Assembly (NCBI GenBank): GCA_002189035.1 | Contig: NEEC01000002.1 | Coordinates: 6,634,001 to 6,698,000, forward strand | DNA: 64,000 bases | Reading direction: 5' to 3' | DNA from: Utricularia gibba | Taxonomy: Eukaryota > Plantae > Magnoliophyta | In this document: piece after piece, positions 25,216 to 57,200 of the stretch | Position numbering within the stretch: the stretch's first letter is position 1 | How the letters are laid out: the number at the start of each line of letters is the position of its first letter | Notes under the pieces: generated by a model | Seen by the model: only the letters and a program-made list of their open reading frames with translations | What the model was told of the DNA's origin: nothing | The model's database searches: none | Program-made: the position numbers and the translations under genes

Positions 25216-25375
25216 CGATTACGGTTTTGCAGTGGCTTCGATATTTCCAACAACCTGGAGCTCGCAGGTTTATTTTTATTTAAGATGGCTGCGGTAAAGA
25301 TTGAATTCTTGTCTAGTAGCTCTGGGAAGGGAACTGTGATCGGAATGGGTTTTCGAGTTTGTGAGTAGAGCTACG

Positions 25376-28300
25376 ATGGCAGAAGACGGACTGGATGGTG
25401 CAAAAGTTTCCAGCCTCATAAAGCGCGGTCGTCCCCTGACCGCCGCGTCGTGTCTGGTCTCTGGTCCTGCGTTTTCTTCCGCTGAGTTCCATTATCACAA
25501 TTACAAAAGGAAACGCCGTCGAGAGAATCCCTTTTCGGATTTCCAAACCCTTAAACCCTGGTGCAAACCCATGTTTCTTGTTGGGACTCTTACCTTGCCT
25601 GTATTTGCTGATTGCTCGGTAATTAAGTGCAGTTGCTTTCGGTTTTCAGATGGCACGGCTACCGTTTGCTGCGACATTCTGAATTTTGACCTTAGAATGA
25701 TCGATCACAAGATAAAGGTTTTGGCTTGGAACTTTTTACCCGTGAAATGCACGGAGAAGGATGTCAGAGGCGGGTTCTTGGAAATTATTCGTTGGGAATT
25801 TTTCCATGATTTGCCTTTAAGCAGTTGTGGTTTAGTTGGATACGTTGCACTTTGTTCACATTCAGGTGCTTTTGAAGTTGTAGATGACTCAAATATTGGA
25901 CGTACATTGTTTGGTGTTATAGAATCAATAAGCCCCATATTTGTTGCTCCTTGTTCAAGAGACAAATCTGGGTTGACTAATATTATTGGATTTCTTGCGA
26001 ATATTCTAGTTTGTCAATGTAAGTTATGTATTTCAAAAATCTGTGGATCAAAATTAAGATATTTGAATGATGAGGGCGTGAAAGGTCATTCTTTTGTTGA
26101 CGAGGTGATTGTGTACTTTTATGGTCTGGCTTCTTCGTGGCATCCTGCAATTTCAAGATTTATTAGTCATGCGATTTTACTGACTGGTTTGAGGAAGAAG
26201 AATGTTTTTCTTACAAAGGAGGTGCCTCAGCTGATGTTTGTAGCAGGAGATCTCCCGTTGCATCTCACTGTGTTGTTTAGGAAGCAAGATGTAGTTCAAA
26301 GGGATGGTGTGAAGGGTAAGGGTGAAAGCATAGCCTACTCTGGGCTGGTAACTGGTATTTACATGCAAGGTCAGGTTGCAGAGTTGGATAAAGATGTGAT
26401 GCTATTGCTGACCGATCAGCTTCTAAATGTGCCTCATTCAATGAGAGTCGGTGCAATTGTATGTTATTTTGGGAAAAAAAAAAGAAGTTGCTTTCAAACT
26501 AAAATTCCACGACTTTTTCACTCCACTAAAGTTACATAGGTTCTAATATATTCCTTTATTGGTATCCCTTCAGGTGACTTTGAAGCATTCTCATTTAGTG
26601 GATCCACAATTTCCATGGAGGAAGATGTTGATTCTTGGTGTTTGTTGCAGAACTACCTTGCATGTTGAGTCATTCTCTCCACTGGAAACAAGGTGGGATC
26701 CTTATACACTTAATTCTTTCTATATGTTGATTATTTCACTTTTCCTATGATAAGTCTGGTGCAGTAATGTGTGCCAGGTGTTATCTGAAATCAAGATTTG
26801 GATGCGATCTTCAGAAGTATATCGATTCGTTGAATTATTCTGCAAAATTATGGTATTCAGAAAATTTTATATAATTTAGGGTGTTTCTCAGTTGAATTTA
26901 TTTGTTGTTTTTTGATGGTTAATTGACGACAGTATTTTACTCCAGGGTGTTGCTTATTGTCTCTTGTTTGAGGAAGAAGTTCAAAGGAATCCTGTCTGAG
27001 ATGGAACTGTTGGGATCAGAAAATGTTTGTCTTACTTTCTTGTCTCTATTTTTTCAGCACTGAGTTATTCTTTTGATGGTTTTTTAGGCACTTTGTTGTT
27101 GTTGGTTTCATTGTAATTTCTAACTTTTATATAGTTTATGCAGAAAGAAGGGCTGGCTAAAAGATATGCTTGCGCTCATTTGCCAAAATCAGCTTACCAG
27201 ACTTGTGTAATATGCCATCTTCCAAACCATATTTTTTTTTTTTTATCATTTCTTGTGGTTCTTTTGCTCCCTTAACGCCATATTTTTTTAGCGTGGACCC
27301 CTGGCACAATTCTGTAAACCAGATTTAGGTTTTGTTGGCAAGGTTACATGCTGTAGCAACCTGAGATTGGTGAATTTTCAGCTTTGAACTCAGTTTACAT
27401 TTCTAATGCCCAATTGATGCTGTGACGGCTTGAAATTTTACACTTCTTGTTTGCGTTGTTGTGAGTTCAGGTGCCACCTATTGCTACTTTAATCAACTAT
27501 TTTGTGGCTACATGGAAGAACATTCTTGATGACTCAGAGAATTTTCCCGACCCTGTGGCTCAGTTTAGTAATGAAAATTCTCTTCCATATAATCTGAGTT
27601 CTTGCACACAACCAGTTATAAGATGGATGCATGCTCAAGAAACTGGGGTACACATAATGGGAACTTTAAGGGTAAGAAGAATATCAACCTTTTTCCCCGA
27701 CTCATATCTATACATGCTTGAGTTTGAGCTATCAGCTAATGACATCATAGCAGATATGCTTTCAACCATAACTCTCGTACATTTGTTGAGGGGAAGAACT
27801 GGATTCCCCATTAAGCATTTTTCTTCTCCACCATGATGCACAGATGTACAGTAATACGCTTCTGAACTGCCTGACAGCTGTTTCTGCCTTTTCTCACTCA
27901 GTTTTCATCCTCTGGAAGAATGCAGCTTATTGACGCGACAGGTGAAATAGATATTGCATTTGAAGTTCCGGCGTTTCACTACATGAACAGAGTTTATGAG
28001 GTCTCCTGGTGTTTCAACTCTCTTTTACTTAATTCTGCCATTTTTCTATGGCTAAATGTTGCTCTCTGACTCTTTAGGCAAAGGATTACAAGATAATACT
28101 GGAAAGCATGCCTTATGAGTTGAAGAATATGGAATTCACTTCAGAAAAATGCTTTTCATGTGGTAGCATACTTGGCAATGCTCAACCAAGAAAACTTATT
28201 GAAATGCCAGGGTATATTTACTGCTATGAAGATTCTGGGAGCTGCTCTGGTCTCTTTGGGGATAAAGAAAATTTTCTTGAGTTTGAGGAAGGAGAATTTC

Positions 28301-47216: not shown

Positions 47217-48345
47217 ACTCTAAAGCCACATTTTCTTTTGCTTGTGTGGACTGTGGATGGATGTCACCAAAGATATCTAGTAGCTTCCTGCTATGTAGCC
47301 TTTCATGTTTCAATGGAAGTAATCCATTGCTGCACACATACCATCAGACGCAGCACTGAATCCAAAGGGAGGAGGAGATGAAGCTGAAGGATAATCAAGA
47401 AATGAACAGATAAAAAGCCTGTGCAGTTGGTGGAGTTGGTGAACAGAAAGCCAACACAGTGTTTGGAATCTTTTCTGAGGTAACTCTAAAATGGCTCGTT
47501 AAAGATTGCTTTTTGACTCCAAGGGCATGGAAAAAGGCAGAAAGACGAACCTTGATTCAAAAGAAATGCGTTCAAAAGTCAGACTTGGTAGGAAAATCTG
47601 AGGCATCATCGAGGAACACATAAGAAACCCGAACCATTTTCTGCACCTTTGAGAGAAATCAGCAGTACAGCAAAATCGTGTTATGGGCTACGCCAACAGC
47701 AGAGTTTTTTTCTTTTCTTGTCAGCACCACGAAGGCAAATTCCAAATCCTGCAACTCCGGGAAGAAAACACAGTGAATGGGTCAATTCATTACACACCAA
47801 TGGAGACAAAACCCTGGAAGTTACTACAAGACTTGTCCATCGTTGGAAAAGATCAGAATTTTACCAAATAAATTGTTATTATTTAAATATGAATGTTCTA
47901 CATCGGAGGGAGCTCAATGTAGCGGCCTAGTGACGACAATGGGGCTTGTGACGGCATGTTTACCGGCGGTTTCTACCCAAACCAATGAACCGTACAAAAC
48001 GGAAGTTCTTAACTGCAAGGCGCCTTCTACGGTGAGCTTGAAGCTTTTCTTCTCGTGCATGTTGTTGAACTCCAGTCTATCCGGCACCACCGTGACCTTC
48101 ACGCCGCTGTCGAAGGCCGACGTCTTCGCCACGTAAACGGCCCTCCCGTTCCCCATGTACGTCACCGTCCTGCGGAACTCCTTCACCGTGTGGCTACTGG
48201 CGTCGAAGAAGGCTATGAAAGAAGGGTAGTTCAGATCCAAGGAAGGACTGGAGCAGTGGAAAGTCCCTGATCTGGTGATGGCTTTTATCTGGTTTGCGGT
48301 GAAGTTTAGTCCGCAGAGAAGATTGATGTAATCTTGGGAAGATGA

Positions 48346-48790
48346 TAAAAGTATTTTTGGCTGCTTGATTTTGTTGGAGACTTGGTTGAACGTTGAGAGA
48401 ATGTTGAAGTTTGTGGATATTGACTATTGTTTTTGGATCGAAAAGAACTTTCCTTTTTTTCATAAAGCAAACAGGGATTTATATAGATGAGGAGAGTTGC
48501 CCGTTGGATCATATCAGGCCTAAAATATGACCGTTGCCTTTAGTCTGTAGATTAGTCCTCTTGTTCATCTACTGTGTAGCAGCCAGAATTTACTAGGACT
48601 TCTTTCATGGACTGGGCTTCAGATGCTTCTTCTTGGGCCAGTAGTTTGGAATGTTGAGGCCCAAGTATGATAAGGCCTTTTTCCCAATCTAATTGAGGGT
48701 TGCTTCTCATGGGAGGAACAGAGGTCGCGCGCCATTCATCTTCGCGGGTTGAGACTTCCCGGATCTTCGTTGCTCCACCACTTGCTGACA
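48346..48790 (-). repeat. 3' LTR (445 bp), TG...TA termini
   Basis: Matches 53788-54233 except one substitution (48539 T vs 53982 A) and T7 vs T8 in one run, by eye. TATA-like TATATAAA on the minus strand at about 48480. Confidence 0.97.
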
Positions 48791-49754
48791 TTCCTCCTGA
48801 GGGAGTAATGAAGATCCGGCTGTTGTCACAAGAGGATTTCTCCGAATTCCCAGCATTTCTCTGATTCTGTTGAAATTCCTTGGGAATAAGCATTTGGTGA
48901 GAATATCTGCAGGTTGCTCATCCGATGGTAAGTACTCAAGTTTAATCAGTCCTTCCTTCACATAATCTCTGAGTATATGGTATTTAAGCTTGATGTGCTT
49001 GGTCCGACCGAACATCACAGGATTTTTTTTTGATGCTAATGGCAGATTTGTTATCTATCTTGAGTATTATCGGTCTTGTAATTTGAATTTTCAGGTCATC
49101 GCATAATTTCACCAACCATTGCGCATGGTTGGCAGCAGCAGCTCCTGCGATGTATTCGGCTTCTGCCGATGATTGTGCAGTGACGGCTTGTTTCTTGCTG
49201 TTCCATGAAAATACCGCTGATCCTAAGTTGAATAGATAGCCTGTGGTAGATTTACAATCTTGTTCGTCGCCAGCAAAGTCTGAATCAACAAATCCCTGCA
49301 AAATAGGGTTAGTACCTTTCTTGTAATATAAACCAAAGGAAGTTGTGGCCTTCAAATATTTCAGGATACGTGTTGCTATTTCCAGGTGTGTGTTGTGTGG
49401 CTGATGCATGAATCTGGCCAGAAATGATACGGCGAAGGTTATATCCGGTCTAGTAGCAGTTAAATACATCAGAGCGCCAATGAGTTTCTGGTAGTTATGA
49501 GAGTCAACTGGATGAGAATTAAGGTCAGATAATTTCTTTCTAACTTCTGGTGAGAAAGGAGTAGTAGATACTTTTGATGATTCCATGCTGTATTTTTTGA
49601 GTAGTTCCTCTGTATATCTACGTTGGTTCAAAAATATGAAGTCTTTATGTTGAATGATCTCCATTCCTAGGAAATAACGTGCATGTCCCAGATTGGTGAG
49701 TTCAAATCTTTGCTGCAATAGCTTCTGTAATTCAGAAATTCGTTCTTCACTGCT
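48707..49754 (-). CDS. Copia RT C-terminal half plus RNase H (element orientation)
   Basis: SSEERISELQ...FELTNLG..RYFLGMEI, YQKLIGALMYLTATRPDITFAVS, GFVDSDFAGD..DCKSTTGY, SWNSKKQ, SSAEAEY, TKHI, ADILTK. One slip in the T9 run at 49023-49031. Confidence 0.9.
48791..48800 (-). other. Polypurine tract
   Basis: Minus strand reads TCAGGAGGAA immediately before the TG of the 3' LTR. Confidence 0.7.
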
Positions 49755-49796
49755 GTATACCCTGAAAAAAGTGTATACAGTAATAAGTGTATACAT

Positions 49797-50077
49797 CCAA
49801 ATGCCTGTACTGTTCTCTCCAAGGTCATGTGGACAAAGTGTGTCCCCTGAAAAAATACCATCAGATTGGAGGAAAGGCTGCAGATCCTAAGGACAAACTT
49901 ACTAGCGCTATGAATGATGTAAATCTCGCAGCTGAAATGAATAAGAAGAAGATTGATATTTACTCTCTGCGCCGCAAAACTCTAATCACATCATTTGTGG
50001 ATCTAAGGAAACAAGACATCTGGTTTATCGATAGCGGATGCAGTCATCATATAACCAACGACAAGAGTCTATTCACA
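49797..50077 (+). repeat. 281-bp inverted duplication, arm 1
   Basis: CCAAATGCC...CTATTCACA is the reverse complement of 52681-52961. Both arms translate to an identical peptide. Confidence 0.95.
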
Positions 50078-52680
50078 ACCTTCATCGAGCTAACTGGGAA
50101 AGTAATCGAAATTGCTGATGGAAATCACTTACAGGTCATCGGTCAAGGAACAGTTTGCCTTGAAACTGTCCAGAAATTAATCAAGATCACAGACGTGTAT
50201 CTGGTGCCCCAGGCCTACCACAATCTACTAAGCACTGGCCAGCTGGTTGAAAAGGGGATGAAAGTTCATCTGGAAAGTAATGAGTGCAAAATATTAGATG
50301 AAGAAGATAATATACTCCTTACGGTTGCTATGACTGATAGGGTCTTTCCACTGCTTCCGAATGCTACATCCATCGATTACAACATTTGCCTCAAGTCCCT
50401 AGAATCATCTGAGATTTGGCACCAACGGTTAGGTCACCATCACTATGCCTCCCTTATATCCATGAAGAAGAGAAACCTGGCAGAGGGGATTCCTAATATA
50501 ATTCCTGAGGAAAAACACTGCAGAATATGCTTTCAAGGGAAGATGAGCCGAACACCACTCCCTAAGTCCAGCATTCATTCTCAGAAAAAATTGGAAGTTG
50601 TTACCAGTGACGTCTGTGGGCCCATGGCCTCTCCTACTCGAGCCGGCAACAAATATTACGTGATCTTTATTGACGAATATTCAAAGTATACCTGGATCTA
50701 TCTCCTGAAGCATAAATCAGAGGTTTTGCACCACTTCCAAGTCTTCAAGGTCCTTGCAGAAACTCAAAGCAATAGTAAGATTCTAACACTCCGGTCAGAC
50801 AACGGAGGTGAGTACAAATCAACTGAACTGAGACACATTTGTGAGACAAATGGTATTACTCACCAGTTTACAACGCCATATACGCCAGAGCAGAACGGCA
50901 TATGTGAACGAAAGAACAGGACAATAGTCAATATGGCTCGGTGTCTACTCTATCAAAAACACTTACCTCTAGAATTCTGGGGCGAAGCAGTCAACACAGC
51001 CGTGTATCTGTTGAACCGCCTGCCAACCAAAGGAAATAAAGACTGTAAAACTCCTTATGAGCTATGGTACAACAAAATTCCAAGCCTAGATCACATGAAG
51101 GTATTTGGATCACCCTGCTATATATACATTCCAAAGGAGAAGAGATCAAAATGGGACAAAAGATCTGATGAAGGAATTTTCCTGGGATATAGCAATACAA
51201 GTAAAGCCTACAGGGTACTGAATCTAAGAACAAATGAGGTGGAACTCAGTCGTGATGTAACAGTAGACGAGACTAGAATTTACAACTGGAGTTCCTCGAC
51301 AACACATGACAAAAATCATTCTTATTCAGAAAATATATGGAATTTATTCCCTCAACAAGGACATGATGCAACAACCGAACCCCTCAGCATCCACCCAGCG
51401 AGGAACAGTCCTAGTCAAGACTCTATTCAACAAGAAATGACAGCCTCAGGAACAAATATGTTAAGGGTCCAAGCAACCCTAGAAGATCAAATCACAAACT
51501 CAAATGATCGAGCCTCAAACTCAACAGATTTAAGAGGACACTCGGTGTCAACGACAGACATCCTAGAAGTCTCTAATAGCGAAAATTTGCCACCACCTAG
51601 TCCTGATGTTCCGAGAACAATTGAGCCCGAAAGCCCCTGTACAACAGAAGATCCTGTTAATACCCAACAGTTTCCAGAAGGCTCCTTGGCCACTACTATC
51701 GAAGACATGAGATATGAGGATGCAGACTCAGAGCACATACCTGAACAAACTCTAGAATGTCATGAAACCCTCATCAACAGCATCAGAAATCCAAAGGAAA
51801 TCACTGAGCTATCATCAACCGATACATCAGAAGAAGAAAACTCATCAGGAGAAGATGAAGAAACTCAAAACCGAGGACCCAACCTAGCAGCAAGAAATCC
51901 TATACTCATTCCCTCACCTCAAAGGCAAAGTTACCTGGAAGATTACGGACAAGAAGGGGTTCCTTACACCCCACATCATCTATGTATGGATCTGAAACAA
52001 AATGAAGACAGCTCACCTGTGCGAGGATATGCACCAATCAACGATATCTATGATAGGGCATTGAGCACCTATGAACCAGCAAGCGTTCAGGAAGCTCTCG
52101 CTGACCCAGATTGGAAGAAATCCATAGACGAAGAATTCAACTCCATCCAGAAACACGGCGTTTGGACAGCAGTGCCTAAGCCGAAGCAGAAAAAACCTCT
52201 GGACCTAAAATTCATATTCCGTCCCAAGTTAAATCCTGATGGCACTCTGAACAAAAGAAAATCCAGACTGGTGGTAAAGGGATATTTACAGAAAGAAGGG
52301 ATTGATTACCTGGAAACCTTCGCTCCGGTGGCAAGATTAGACACCATTAAGCTGATTATTGCACTTGCGGCCTGCAACAAGTGGTATTTACATCATCTGG
52401 ACATAAAAACGGCCTTTCTGCATGGAGAGTTAAGCGAAGACATATATGTGAACCCCCTCCAGGTTTCATCATCCGAGATAATCCAGAATATGTACTGAAA
52501 TTAAATAAAGCTTTATACGGACTCAAGCAGGCCCCCAAAGAATGGTATACTACCATTGACACTTTCTTTCTAGAGCTGGGATATACAAGAAGTCAAAATG
52601 ATACTACATTATACATATCTGAGGATATCCAAGGAAAAGTTATTGTCTCCTTATACGTAGACGACATTCTAATCACAGGC
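49797..52680 (+). CDS. Copia second knuckle-protease-integrase-RT N-terminal half, inverted relative to the LTRs
   Basis: About 900-aa + strand ORF (CLYCSLQGHVDKVC, DSGCSHH, WHQRLGH, integrase core, RT FAPVARLDTIK...LDIKTAFLHG), continuing after a 1-bp slip at about 52453 to LYVDDILITG. Opposite strand to gag and RNase H. Confidence 0.93.
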
Positions 52681-52961
52681 TGTGAATAGACTCTTGTCGT
52701 TGGTTATATGATGACTGCATCCGCTATCGATAAACCAGATGTCTTGTTTCCTTAGATCCACAAATGATGTGATTAGAGTTTTGCGGCGCAGAGAGTAAAT
52801 ATCAATCTTCTTCTTATTCATTTCAGCTGCGAGATTTACATCATTCATAGCGCTAGTAAGTTTGTCCTTAGGATCTGCAGCCTTTCCTCCAATCTGATGG
52901 TATTTTTTCAGGGGACACACTTTGTCCACATGACCTTGGAGAGAACAGTACAGGCATTTGG
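52681..52961 (-). repeat. 281-bp inverted duplication, arm 2
   Basis: TGTGAATAG...GGCATTTGG, in frame with upstream gag on the minus strand. Confidence 0.95.
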
Positions 52962-53722
52962 CGTCAGGGCTCCAGAAACATTGTGTTGGTGAATGGCCTT
53001 TTCGCTTGCAGAATGGGCATGAATCTCCAGTACTTGGTTTCTCAATTTTTGCTTGAAAGATCACCGGTTCATTTGATGATTGAGAACCATAGCCTTTCTG
53101 ATTTTCTGTTGCCTTGAAGGCAAGTTCCTGGCCTTCACCAAGTCCGACTTCAACTTCGGATTCACTGAGTCTTTCTAGTAGTTTTCTGGAGGATATGGAG
53201 TGAATGCCTGTGACCCGCAAAGTAGTGACTACAGGGGCAAAGGACCGCGGTAGGAACTGAGTATTTTTGATTTAATTCTTCTGTCTTCCAAGGGCTCTCC
53301 CAAGGTCTGTAACTCAGTGACAATTTTGATTAGCGTTTCTGAAAAATGAGAGATACTCATACCTGGTAAGAATTTCAGGTTGTCAAAGAGCTCCCATTGA
53401 CGTTGAATGCGGCTCTCACGGGCTTCCGTATCCTCTCCGTAGAATTCCTCCAATTTTTTCCAGATGTCTTTGGACTTTTCAGTAGCATAACACGGTTGAA
53501 CACTTCTTCAGATAAGGCTTGATCCAGAGCATACTTAGCTTTCTTTACTTGAGCATCTGTGAGTTTGAGACTTTCTGCTGTGGCTATTTCAGAGGAGTCT
53601 GGACGTACAGGATCCACCACAGACCATAAGTCGTTCATTTGCAGGTAACTTTCCATTCGTACTGCCCAAGAAGCGTAGCGCTGACCAGTGAAGATTGGAG
53701 GAGCTTGTTGGAGGGCTGCCAT
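52681..53722 (-). CDS. Copia gag plus start of protease (element orientation)
   Basis: MAALQQAPPIFTGQRYASWAVRMESYLQMNDLWSVV, UBN2-like segment, CPFCKRKGHSPTQC and CLYCSLQGHVDKVC knuckles. Two 1-bp slips (53469-53471, 53253-53254). Confidence 0.9.
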
Positions 53723-53769
53723 TCTGAGAGACTGCAATGATAAGAGGAGATGGGAGTCGGTGAAGTATC

Positions 53770-53787
53770 TTCACGTCGGGTTCACCA
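53770..53787 (-). other. Primer-binding site complementary to the tRNA-Trp 3' end
   Basis: Minus strand TGGTGAACCCGACGTGAA directly abuts the 5' LTR. Its complement TTCACGTCGGGTTCACCA matches the 3' end of plant cytosolic tRNA-Trp(CCA) as recalled from memory, and is not the tRNA-iMet PBS TGGTATCAGAGC. Confidence 0.8.
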
Positions 53788-54233
53788 TAAAAGTATTTTT
53801 GGCTGCTTGATTTTGTTGGAGACTTGGTTGAACGTTGAGAGAATGTTGAAGTTTGTGGATATTGACTATTGTTTTTGGATCGAAAAGAACTTTCCTTTTT
53901 TTTCATAAAGCAAACAGGGATTTATATAGATGAGGAGAGTTGCCCGTTGGATCATATCAGGCCTAAAATATGACCGTTGCCATTAGTCTGTAGATTAGTC
54001 CTCTTGTTCATCTACTGTGTAGCAGCCAGAATTTACTAGGACTTCTTTCATGGACTGGGCTTCAGATGCTTCTTCTTGGGCCAGTAGTTTGGAATGTTGA
54101 GGCCCAAGTATGATAAGGCCTTTTTCCCAATCTAATTGAGGGTTGCTTCTCATGGGAGGAACAGAGGTCGCGCGCCATTCATCTTCGCGGGTTGAGACTT
54201 CCCGGATCTTCGTTGCTCCACCACTTGCTGACA
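53788..54233 (-). repeat. 5' LTR (446 bp), TG...TA termini
   Basis: Minus strand begins TGTCAGCAAG at 54233 and ends ATACTTTTA at 53788, followed by the PBS. Confidence 0.97.
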
Positions 54234-57200
54234 GATGAATCGTAAACAAGTCCTGGGTTTAAAGCTTTGTTTGGATCGATGTGTCCAGCTCCAATCCCCA
54301 GGGGAGTCGCAGCTCTGTTCTGGAATCCTAGATCTTTGATCGGGGTTCGGGTGTTGTCGAGTTGGTAGGCGGTGGTCATGATGGCGGATCTGATCGCCGC
54401 CGGCGACCAATCACGATGGACTGCCCTGATTAGGGCAGCGACTCCTGCTGCATGGGGACACGCCATTGATGTCCCTGAAGCTATGTTGAACTTACTGAAG
54501 AGATTTCTAAAGTCTATCTCTTTTGCTAATAGTGAAGCCGGGGGCCATGCTGCTATAATCATGTCTCCGGGAGCCATAATATCCGGTTTCAGAACATGTG
54601 GGCAACTCCTCGACGGTCCACGGGCGCTGTAGGATGGGAGCTGCGGCGCCGGGCGGGTTCCGGTGACCGTTCCCCCGAAGTGTGAAAATCGTGCGTTTGG
54701 GTCAGGGGAGTTTTTTAAGTAATCGAGAATTTTCCGGCCTTGCTCCGGCGAGAGAAACAGCGCCGGATACGGAACACGGATTCGAGACGATAAATCGCCG
54801 TCAGCAGTAATGAAAACGCCGGCGTTTACGCCGGAATCTTGAACGCAATATATTTGAATTCCCAATAACCCATCGGAGTCAGAGGAGCAAACAGCAATTT
54901 TGTGCTGCTGTTTTCTCAGCAAGTCCTCGTCGTCACAAGTCGCCATAAGAACAAGAGGAAGCTCAGCAGAGGAGTGGTTTCCGTAAAACAGAGAAAGCCC
55001 ATCTATGGCAACACCGTTGCCGAGAGTTATCGTTCCCCTGAATTCCCGGTCCATGACAGCCGCCGCGACGGTGAGAACCCACGGCGTTCCGTTATGCAGA
55101 GACGCAGAATTCGGGCCATCGTTCCCGGAAGAAGTTACGACAAAGATACCTTTCTCCATAGCAGCGAAGGACGCAATTGCAATCGGATCAGTATACAGAG
55201 GATGATTATCGAATCCCAAAGACAACGATATCACATCGACGCCATCTTCAATCGCTTGATCAATCGCAGCAATTATGTCAGATGCTGCAGAACCCTCCTC
55301 CCACACAGCCTTATACATGGCTAATCTAGCTTTAGGCGCCGCGCCTCTGGCGTCGCCGGAGCCGTACCCGAAAAACGAAGTTCCCGGAACGACGCTCCCC
55401 CCGCAGTGGACGAAGTATGGGTACCGTGGCCATCGGAGTCGCGAGCGGAGTTCATCGAAATCTTCAAATTGCGATTTCCGGCGAGGAGCCCGCGGTTGAA
55501 GTAACGAGCTCCGATGAGCTTTTTGTTACAGGTGGAGGAATTAAACATCACCCCTGCTTGGCATATCCCTTTCCATCTCAACGGGATTTCTTTCATTCCT
55601 CCGTCTTTAAAGCTATCACTTTCCGGCCATATTCCCGTATCCACGACTCCGATGATCACATCATCCCCGTAATTAGAATCCGGCCACACCCCAGCACCGG
55701 AATTCAATCCCAGAAACTGGTAAGAATGAGTCGTATCCAACCTCACGCTGGAATCCTTGATACAAGAAACAAAACCAGGGGAATTCTTAACAGCTTCAAG
55801 CTCCGAAGAAGAGAGAGCTGCACTAAACCCACTAATGGCGTGAGTATAAGAATACACCAGCTTGGAAAGGGGTCGATCCGTGACAGAGGCCACGGTGTTC
55901 AAGTGCCAGTTTTGATGATCGGAGTAGGCCCTGGGCATGGCCGATCCGTCCATGAAGATAATGTAAACCTCCGCCTCCGCAGAAGTAGACGTCAAGTACC
56001 CATTTGCCTTCTGCAAGCCGAGGAGAGAAAGAAGCAGCAGGAGGCGGGGAGAAAGCCCGGAAGCAGCATGGCAGCGGTGCTCCTGATTGCCGGTGCACAG
56101 ATTCTGTGAATAATTCACTAATCAGAGAACAGGTGTCGCTGTTGTGCTCCGATGACCGGGATAATGCTTTTTCCAAAAGCCACTCACCGCGTGTGCCGTG
56201 TCCACATTGAACTCAACTCACCATCTTCCTCCCCTGTCGATCATCCCCATTCCGGCCAAAAACTGCCCTCCTTTTCAACCATGAATGCCTCCAATCAACA
56301 AGACGTCCTCCTCTCGTCTCCCCTGGTAACACAAACCTCACATGAAAACCTAACACATTTATAAAATATTTAATTAATTTCATAATTAAAAATATAATAT
56401 TTTCTTTTTGTCAACAAAAAAGTTGTCTATTTTGGAAAAAGAAAATACCGAGTAGAACAAGAAAGTCATATTAAAAATTTATTTAATCACAACTATTTTT
56501 CTAATATTCTATATAAATTAAATTATAATTTTTTATTAAATATATTACCACTAATTTCTTTTTAAATATATAATTAATAATTATTATTATAATGATTCAC
56601 TTTATTCTTGTACTCTCTGTTTTGAATATCAAAATTTTACGATTTTATATTATTTTCTTTCAAGAAAAAACATCATTACAAAATTAGATTCATTTTATAT
56701 AAATTGTATCTTTATTTCATTCATAATTAATGTGGGATTCACTAAAATTTATTAAATTCTCACAATAATATAGATATCATTTCAATTTTCTATTTATAAC
56801 TACTTTTATTATTAAAAATTAAAACACATATATTTATTGATCAAAAAATCTTTTTAAATAACATTTTTACAAAATATATTCGATCTTTCTAATATTTTTA
56901 TTTTTATATAAATTAATCTCATACACTTCAATTTTATTATACTCATTAACATTAATATTTTTTTCTTTTTTCCATTCCTCTACACGACTCATCTCTAGGG
57001 GTCATTCACAAAAGTAAACATTATCATATTCGTTTACCTAGTCAACAAAATACGTCTAAGGTGGCTATTTTTTTTATATAGTGTATAACACATGTCCAAA
57101 TTTCTAATTCATCTCATTTTTAGGTCTTCCAATCTTGTTTCTCATTTCTGGAAATAATTTCTACTTCAAATGTATGTATGGTTACTACGGACCATAAGTC

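What the first reader, a model, noticed from the sequence alone, without database searches (positions are those of the whole stretch)
49755..52961. Retrotransposon with its PR-INT-RT core flipped between a 281-bp inverted duplication, with no RT bases lost
Element-strand order is LTR-PBS-gag-[281 bp]-(inverted: RT N-half, INT, PR rest, [281 bp])-filler-RT C-half-RNase H-PPT-LTR. The + strand RT ends ATC ACA GGC (52680) and the minus strand resumes AGC AGT GAA GAA (49754). Joined, they read LYVDDILITG-SSEERI with no gap. At the 52680 junction AGGC|TGTGAA aligns with the donor context AGGT|TGTGAA, a microhomology. Model A: staggered-break inversion duplicating 281 bp. Model B: a break or template switch in RT captured an inverted 281-nt copy, and the 2603-bp middle then flipped by recombination between the arms, or was mis-oriented in assembly. 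With near-identical LTRs, the event occurred during reverse transcription or very soon after insertion. The arms could make this an invertible segment present in both orientations.
Basis: partly seen in the sequence, partly recalled or inferred. Interest (0 to 1): 0.85.

Follow-up and report, generated by a model that had tools for sequence, protein, structure and literature searches.

The report
Young copia retrotransposon with inverted core
One very recent copy of a plant copia retrotransposon, sitting inside a subtilase gene, has its protease-integrase-RT core turned round between two identical 281-base inverted arms. Its sister copies in public read sets are colinear, so this is a neatly resolved one-off rearrangement, not a new kind of element.

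Summary
A Ty1/copia element lies on the minus strand at 48346-54233, with a 5-bp target duplication and LTRs alike at 445 of 447 aligned positions. It reads LTR-PBS-gag-[arm], then inverted RT N-half/INT/PR and an inverted arm, then a 42-nt filler, RT C-half, RNase H, PPT and LTR. The arms (49797-50077 and 52681-52961) match perfectly over 281 nt. The RT is cut with no loss: Pfam RVT_2 position 176 meets 176.

What is new comes from public read-derived contigs. In three runs from two studies, contigs identical to this copy join 49754 directly to 52680 and join gag-arm directly to PR. So the family's common form is colinear, about 5.57 kb. The only outside support for the rearrangement is one 60-nt contig at depth 4, against 12-16 for the colinear paths, across the 52680|52681 junction. 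The filler junction is not covered in three of the runs and not shown in the fourth. Contigs cannot tell which way the middle points.

Best reading: a real, private rearrangement of one copy. One clean break in RT, inverted copying of 281 nt, and an end join with filler, made either during reverse transcription or by chromosomal repair. The claimed microhomology is weak (chance about 0.06). A hairpin role like Mu killer is possible but untested. Interest is modest.

The parts
48341..48345 (.). Target-site duplication GATGA, left copy
   Evidence: Read; the same five letters stand at 54234-54238.
48346..48790 (-). 3' LTR of the element (in element sense it starts TG and ends TA)
   Evidence: Alike to the other LTR at 445 of 447 aligned positions.
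48791..49754 (-). Segment D: RT C-half, RNase H region and polypurine tract. It has a frame break at about 49026-49042.
   Evidence: RVT_2 profile 176-242; P0001 residues 1015-1316; polypurine tract read.
49755..49796 (.). 42-nt filler at the junction between the inverted arm and the RT C-half
   Evidence: Not found elsewhere in the element. It shares an 11-nt word with the arm 49 nt away, and 10% of shuffles do as well. The depth figures show no contig of X1, X2 or X5 over it, and none is listed for X6.
49797..50077 (+). Arm copy B': end of gag to the protease active site, inverted relative to the element
   Evidence: 281 of 281 letters complementary to 52681-52961.
50078..52680 (+). Segment C: rest of protease, integrase and RT N-half, inverted relative to the element. 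It has a frame break at about 52452.
   Evidence: Pol_BBD, gag_pre-integrs, rve, SH3_retrovirus and RVT_2 3-176. No differing letters from contigs of X1, X2 and X5, apart from one single-letter length difference at 52452.
52681..52961 (-). Arm copy B in the element's own orientation, continuous with gag
   Evidence: The junction 52680|52681 is covered by a 60-nt contig of X1 at depth 4.
52962..53787 (-). Segment A: primer-binding site flush with the LTR, and gag. It has frame breaks at about 53253 and 53468-53486.
   Evidence: DUF4219 and Retrotran_gag_2; tblastn frames.
53788..54233 (-). 5' LTR
54234..54238 (.). Target-site duplication GATGA, right copy
   Evidence: Read.
54239..56118 (-). 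Host subtilase gene, upstream part (I9 inhibitor and S8 domains), same strand as the element
   Evidence: Pfam; ORFs.
47914..48340 (-). Host subtilase gene, downstream part (fn3_6 domain, running to its stop codon)
   Evidence: Pfam fn3_6 1-99; ORF.

Best explanation
This is a real rearrangement private to one very young Ty1/copia insertion, whose family is otherwise colinear. Call the colinear order A (PBS-gag), B (281 nt, gag end to protease site), C (protease rest, integrase, RT N-half), D (RT C-half, RNase H, PPT). This copy reads A-B-C'-B'-filler-D, where a prime marks an inverted segment. The simplest history starts with one clean break in RT between C and D, with both ends kept to the base. 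The 3' end on the C side then primed in inverted orientation at the B/C border and copied B backwards for 281 nt. That new end was joined to D with 42 nt of filler, as error-prone end joining and template-switching polymerases do. This yields A-B-C-B'-filler-D. The assembled orientation then needs one flip of C by recombination between the arms. Alternatively, it could arise directly from a two-step template switch: leave at the end of B, copy C' and B' from the other strand, and return at the break. The event could belong to reverse transcription of the cDNA that integrated, or to repair of the chromosome afterwards. I lean to reverse transcription because the insertion is so young. Shown: the anatomy, the exact RT split, the colinear sister copies, and one junction seen in independent reads. 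Inferred: the order of steps, the stage, and the orientation of the middle in vivo.
For: The arms are perfect over 281 nt and are the only long inverted repeat in the window. The RT halves abut exactly. Contigs of X1, X2 and X5 join 49754 to 52680 with no differing letters, so this breakpoint is a single position with nothing lost on either side. A 60-nt contig in X1, at depth 4 and with no differing letters, covers 52651-52710. In the same run the contigs break at 52680 and at the end of B, as expected if colinear and rearranged forms coexist. The 42-nt filler is new sequence that an assembler would not invent. It has internal repeats and an 11-nt word shared with the nearby arm. The intact 5-bp target duplication and the near-identical LTRs show a normal and recent integration. 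Segment C and the arms carry no differing letters from the family contigs.
Against: No contig of X1, X2 or X5 covers the filler junction, and none is listed for X6. The junction contig is absent from the deeper run X2 of the same sample and from X5 (depth arithmetic), although contig building drops rare branches. The window differs from all four runs by single-letter length differences in two homopolymer runs. The host gene also has a frameshift next to homopolymers. The assembly consensus is therefore imperfect. The microhomology at the junction is no better than chance, and the filler's match to the arm is reached by 10% of shuffles. Nothing here dates the event relative to integration.
Confidence: 0.5

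Rival explanations
1. A cut-and-paste inversion by staggered breaks, after integration. Two nicks 281 bp apart on opposite strands at the gag/protease border, plus a double-strand break in RT, freed the B-C fragment. Fill-in left B on both ends. The fragment was religated in reverse, cleanly at one junction and with 42 nt of filler at the other.
For: This gives the assembled order A-B-C'-B'-filler-D directly, without a later flip. Inverted duplications at inversion breakpoints are the signature that Ranz et al. 2007 (PMC1885836, found) ascribe to staggered breaks. The junction 52680|52681 has no inserted letters.
Against: It needs three strand breaks inside one 5.9-kb element within the short life of the insertion. 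A 281-bp duplex between two nicks does not fall apart on its own. Only one of the two breakpoints carries a duplication.
Confidence: 0.2
2. An assembly artefact. Either the locus is a plain colinear copy, or it is the colinear copy carrying an inverted 323-bp insertion in RT, and the assembler oriented or threaded the middle wrongly through near-identical sister copies.
For: All long contigs in X1, X2 and X5 are colinear and identical to the window's pieces, and the depth figures show no contig over the filler in those runs. The window has single-letter length differences from all runs. The frame breaks near 53253, 52452 and 49026-42, and the host-gene frameshift, lie in or next to homopolymer runs. 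This is typical of a noisy consensus.
Against: The X1 60-nt contig shows the 52680|52681 junction in reads. Forty-two letters of filler with no source elsewhere in the element are not what mis-joins produce. There is no other long inverted repeat in the window. If the assembly was made from long reads, as its error pattern suggests, such reads span 281-nt arms.
Confidence: 0.15
3. The rearrangement is inherited. A non-autonomous subfamily with the flipped core is transcribed, packaged in trans and has inserted here and elsewhere.
For: The LTRs, primer-binding site and polypurine tract are intact. The copy has frame breaks in gag and pol, and at least one of them is probably shared with the contig form, judging by lengths. 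So the family may already depend on proteins supplied in trans.
Against: The junction depth is 4 against 12-16 for the colinear paths in X1, and the junction is absent from X2 and X5 contigs. A 281-bp perfect hairpin in the RNA would hinder reverse transcription and attract Dicer. There is no other copy in the window.
Confidence: 0.07

Closest known systems
Inversions flanked by inverted duplications ('staggered breaks'), Drosophila (Ranz et al. 2007, PMC1885836)
   Same: An inverted segment with an inverted copy of the sequence next to a breakpoint, and no repeat there beforehand.
   Different: Here the scale is 2.9 kb inside one mobile element, not chromosomal. Only one breakpoint is duplicated, and the other carries a 42-nt filler.
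Fold-back inversions and snap-back priming at resected breaks (yeast, PMC7467729; human, PMC3907307)
   Same: A 3' end primes on its own strand in inverted orientation and copies backwards, giving an inverted duplication.
   Different: The spacer here is 2.6 kb rather than a few bases to a few hundred. Copying stopped after 281 nt and the end was rejoined to the other side of the break, so there is no large duplication or dicentric.
Defective retroviral proviruses of the 'internal inversion' class (category used in HIV-1 proviral sequencing, e.g. PMC8473067; from my own knowledge these are ascribed to template switching in reverse transcription)
   Same: An integrated retroelement with normal ends and an inverted internal segment.
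   Different: This is a plant Ty1/copia element, and the stage at which it arose was not determined. Whether those proviruses carry comparable inverted duplications was not checked here.
Mu killer of maize (PMC3440606; Slotkin et al. 2005 as cited in PMC11624286)
   Same: A natural partial inverted duplication of a transposon that can be transcribed into a long hairpin, including by read-through from a flanking gene. Here the host subtilase gene runs in the same direction as the element.
   Different: Mu killer derives from a DNA transposon and has demonstrated siRNAs and heritable silencing. Here no transcript, small RNA or silencing was examined.

Membership tests
Ty1/copia (Pseudoviridae) LTR retrotransposon | Two direct LTRs flanked by a short target-site duplication | tested here: met
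   LTRs alike at 445 of 447 aligned positions; GATGA on both sides.
Ty1/copia (Pseudoviridae) LTR retrotransposon | Primer-binding site next to the 5' LTR and polypurine tract next to the 3' LTR | tested here: met
   A site starting TGG stands flush with the LTR, and a purine run stands before the 3' LTR. The tRNA-Trp assignment rests on memory and on scan notes. It was not tested here.
Ty1/copia (Pseudoviridae) LTR retrotransposon | Copia-type domains in the order gag, protease, integrase, RT, RNase H | tested here: inconclusive
   All the domains are present (RVT_2, rve, gag_pre-integrs, Retrotran_gag_2). In this copy the order is broken by the inversion, but it is colinear in the sister contigs. 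RNase H itself gave no Pfam hit. It is covered only by the alignment to homologues.
Staggered-break inversion | Inverted duplications of formerly single-copy sequence at the ends of the inverted segment | tested here: inconclusive
   Present at one breakpoint (281 nt). The other has no duplication and a 42-nt filler instead.
Fold-back inversion | Inverted duplication with a short spacer, formed by hairpin priming at short inverted repeats | tested here: not met
   The spacer is 2,603 nt. The pairing at the priming site is 3 bp with a mismatched end, which is chance level.
Mu killer-like hairpin silencer | Both arms of an inverted duplication of a transposon lie on one transcription unit | tested here: inconclusive
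   Both arms lie between the LTRs and downstream of a host gene on the same strand. The arms would pair at -545 kcal/mol. No RNA data were examined.
Mu killer-like hairpin silencer | Small RNAs from the arms and silencing of intact copies in trans | not tested

The most novel reading that the evidence does not exclude
The rearranged copy acts as a natural hairpin locus against its own family. Transcription from its 5' LTR, or read-through from the interrupted subtilase gene on the same strand, would give a 281-bp perfect double-stranded RNA matching the gag-protease border of the identical, colinear sister copies. That would seed small RNAs that silence a currently active copia family. It would be a retrotransposon counterpart of Mu killer, which workers on the Arabidopsis copia EVD have looked for (PMC11624286).
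Probability: 0.12. Interest if true: 0.7.

Novelty: new member of a known kind. Interest (0 to 1): 0.3.

Why it matters
The value of this copy is that every breakpoint is known to the base, and the unrearranged form is available from sister copies that are identical in sequence. That makes it a clean natural record of how a break inside a retroelement was mended: one break with nothing lost, 281 nt copied in reverse, and 42 nt of filler. If the locus is transcribed, it is also a ready-made hairpin against an apparently young family. That bears on the open question of how plants first recognise an active LTR retrotransposon. As a structural oddity alone it is ordinary, because defective and rearranged retroelement copies are common.

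Tried and rejected
1. Sister copies by protein. None of the four window ORFs that reach or cross the junctions, or start in the filler, is in the protein collection. A search with the 903-aa ORF found nothing closer than about 49% identity, and about 41% for the best-scoring hits.

2. Sister copies by DNA in metagenome contigs. A 24-nt RT word gave nothing. A 20-nt protease word gave three unrelated elements that share only that motif.

3. Other copies in the window: none.

4. A central polypurine tract at the RT breakpoint, as a built-in plus-strand discontinuity. The breakpoint is not at a purine run of 9 or more or at a near-copy of the 3' tract. Other places in C resemble the tract more. 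Rejected.

5. The filler as a mosaic of neighbouring sequence. Only one 11-nt word matches, in the arm 49 nt away, and 10% of shuffles reach 11 nt somewhere in the element. It is suggestive because of its nearness, not proven.

6. Microhomology at 52680|52681: 3 of 4 letters alike, chance 0.056. This is not evidence for a homology-guided join.

7. A nested second element. Rejected, because there are no extra LTRs and C carries no differing letters from the family contigs.

8. Earlier scan notes searched by sequence and by rearrangement words: blank.

9. Naming the species. The runs are coded, and I ran no further search on it.

Full report
**What is in the sequence**

The window holds exactly one long inverted repeat. 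Base by base, its arms are 49797-50077 and 52681-52961. They match perfectly over 281 nt, followed by one mismatch and three more matching letters.

The arms lie inside an LTR retrotransposon on the minus strand at 48346-54233.
- The LTRs (48346-48790 and 53788-54233) are alike at 445 of 447 aligned positions. They differ by one substitution and one T-run length.
- The five letters GATGA flank both ends, at 48341-45 and 54234-38.
- A primer-binding site starting TGG is flush with the 5' LTR, and a purine run precedes the 3' LTR.
- My element coordinates agree with scan note s1-257902.

**Domains and order**

- On the minus strand, from the 5' LTR: DUF4219 and Retrotran_gag_2 (gag), then the start of the protease barrel inside the right arm.
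- On the + strand, from the left arm: Pol_BBD, gag_pre-integrs, rve, SH3_retrovirus, and RVT_2 profile positions 3-176, ending at 52686.
- On the minus strand again, from 49754: RVT_2 positions 176-242.
- An intact homologue, P0001, aligns residues 938-1014 to 52450-52680 (+) and residues 1015-1254 to 49745-49032 (-).

In element sense the copy therefore reads A-B-C'-B'-filler-D. A is PBS-gag. B is the 281-nt arm. C is the rest of protease, integrase and the RT N-half. D is the RT C-half, RNase H region and polypurine tract. A prime marks an inverted segment. The RT is cut between two adjacent codons with nothing lost.

**What the public reads add**

Six runs hold the stretch or part of it, five of them at least half of its sampled words. 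I laid four runs from three studies on 49300-53400. All four are kept as contigs rebuilt from reads.

- *The RT is unbroken in other copies.* In X1 and X2 (one sample, 2013) and in X5 (a plant-associated metagenome, 2016), contigs with no differing letters join 49754 directly to 52680 on opposite strands.
- *Gag-arm continues into protease.* X2 and X5 join the gag-arm side directly to 50078 onward.
- *One contig is a ring.* X5's contig is 5,153 letters long. It returns from 53400 to 49300 through 1,343 letters, which equals 387 + 447 + 509, that is, through a single LTR. This is what a word-graph assembly makes of a colinear element with identical LTRs. It implies a full length of about 5.57 kb.
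- *A scan note fits this.* Note s1-273770 reports a 5,578-letter copia of the same description on another piece of this genome. I did not check that note.

So the family's common form is colinear and identical in sequence to this copy.

**Support for the rearrangement itself**

Support is thin but real.
- X1 has a 60-nt contig at depth 4, with no differing letters, covering 52651-52710. That length is what a junction gives when the sequence on each side also occurs elsewhere.
- In X1 the long contigs stop at 52680 and at the end of the arm. This is expected if a colinear path and a rearranged path coexist.
- The colinear paths in X1 have depth 12-16, so the junction is a minority form. That is compatible with one rearranged copy among a few colinear ones.
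- The bin depths show that no contig covers this junction in X2 or X5, and none covers the filler (49755-49796) in X1, X2 or X5. None is listed over the filler for X6.
- Contig building removes low-depth branches, so these absences prove nothing. The filler junction still has no independent support.
- Both possible orientations of the middle share the same junction sequences. Only reads that span a whole arm can tell them apart, and none were available.

**Quality of the assembly**

- All four runs carry one more letter than the window at two places, 52452 and 53252. Both are in runs of a single letter, and both are where the window's reading frames break.
- The frame break at 49026-42 and the LTR length difference are also at single-letter runs.
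- The host gene has a frameshift next to such runs.
- This pattern suggests an imperfect consensus from long reads. If so, the reads were long enough to cross 281-nt arms, which argues for the assembled orientation.
- By length alone, the stretch of the X5 ring outside my laid region equals the window's. At least one of the other two frame breaks (53468-86 and 49026-42) is therefore probably shared with the common form. This is an inference.

**How it most likely arose**

The RT breakpoint is used twice, once by each neighbour, and loses nothing. That points to a physical end there rather than two independent jumps. I see three routes.

1. *Single break (fewest events).* One break falls between C and D. 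The C-side 3' end primes in inverted orientation at the B/C border and copies B backwards for 281 nt. That end is then joined to D with 42 nt of filler. The product is A-B-C-B'-filler-D. One recombination between the arms then turns C to give the assembled form.
2. *Two-step template switch.* Synthesis leaves at the end of B, copies C' and B' from the other strand, and returns at the break. This gives the assembled form directly.
This also gives the assembled form directly, but it needs three strand breaks in a very young element.

The sequence gives little help in choosing.
- The pairing at the junction is 3 of 4 letters, at chance level.
- The filler has internal repeats and an 11-nt word shared with the arm 49 nt away. 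However, 10% of shuffles reach 11 nt somewhere in the element.
- A central polypurine tract at the breakpoint was looked for and not found.

The stage is not decided. I lean to reverse transcription. The insertion is nearly new, and cDNA synthesis is far more prone to template switching per event than a chromosome is to a complex repair within so short a time. This rests on general knowledge of retroelements and is not a result obtained here.

**Surroundings**

The element interrupts the coding sequence of a subtilase gene on the same strand. The I9 and S8 domains lie upstream at 54239-56118. The fn3_6 domain lies downstream at 47914-48340 and runs to its stop codon. The reading frame continues across the target duplication.

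Transcription from the 5' LTR, or read-through from the host gene, would put both arms on one RNA. The arms would pair at -545 kcal/mol.

This is the architecture of Mu killer in maize, which makes a hairpin by read-through from a flanking gene (PMC3440606). It is also the kind of trigger that workers on the Arabidopsis copia EVD have searched for (PMC11624286). No RNA or small-RNA data could be examined, so this remains a possibility only.

**Comparison and verdict**

This is a member of Ty1/copia by every feature tested. It carries a rearrangement of a known general kind, an inversion with an inverted duplication. Related cases are the staggered-break signature in Drosophila (PMC1885836), fold-back priming (PMC7467729), and the 'internal inversion' class of defective proviruses (PMC8473067). 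It fails the fold-back definition on spacer length. It meets the staggered-break signature at one breakpoint only.

It is not a new kind of element, and the evidence is against a propagating subfamily. Its merit is base-level resolution, with an identical unrearranged form available for comparison.

I built no joined, consensus or repaired version of the element.

Noticed in passing
window 47914-48340 and 54239-56118, minus strand: The copia element sits in the coding sequence of a subtilase gene (I9, S8, fn3_6), between the catalytic and fn3_6 domains. The gene is on the same strand as the element. It is otherwise open apart from one frameshift around 55320-55410, next to A5 and C6 runs.
   Followed up: partly
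window 49740-49754 plus 52662-52680 (run X6): A 95-99% similar relative in a 2019 run of the same species label joins 49739 to 52661. It therefore lacks 34 nt that straddle exactly the RT position broken in this copy, including the catalytic motif. That contig's depth is like that of X6's other contigs laid on the stretch. Two independent lesions at one site may point to a fragile or pause-prone spot.
   Followed up: no
window 52452 and 53252: Contigs of all four runs have one more letter than the window at these two places, each in a run of one letter, and the window's frames break there. The likely cause is either assembly consensus errors or private changes in this copy.
   Followed up: partly
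run X5, record 8, corresponding to window 48791-54233 without the second arm and filler: A 5,153-letter contig closes on itself through a single LTR. The most likely cause is collapse of identical LTRs in the word graph. A one-LTR DNA circle cannot be excluded from contigs alone.
   Followed up: no
window 53772-53787 and LTR ends at 48346 / 54233: The primer-binding site is flush with the LTR, and from memory it fits the 3' end of tRNA-Trp rather than initiator tRNA-Met. The LTR ends are TG...TA. Several scan notes report the same in other windows of this genome.
   Followed up: no
window 50611-50658 (run X6): In the X6 relative, 46 nt of the integrase region are replaced by 15 other letters.
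   Followed up: no
window 25361-26539, + strand: A long open frame matches the CTC1 telomere-maintenance subunit (CTC1_2, E 5e-77). Together with the subtilase gene, this shows the window is gene-rich plant nuclear DNA.
   Followed up: no
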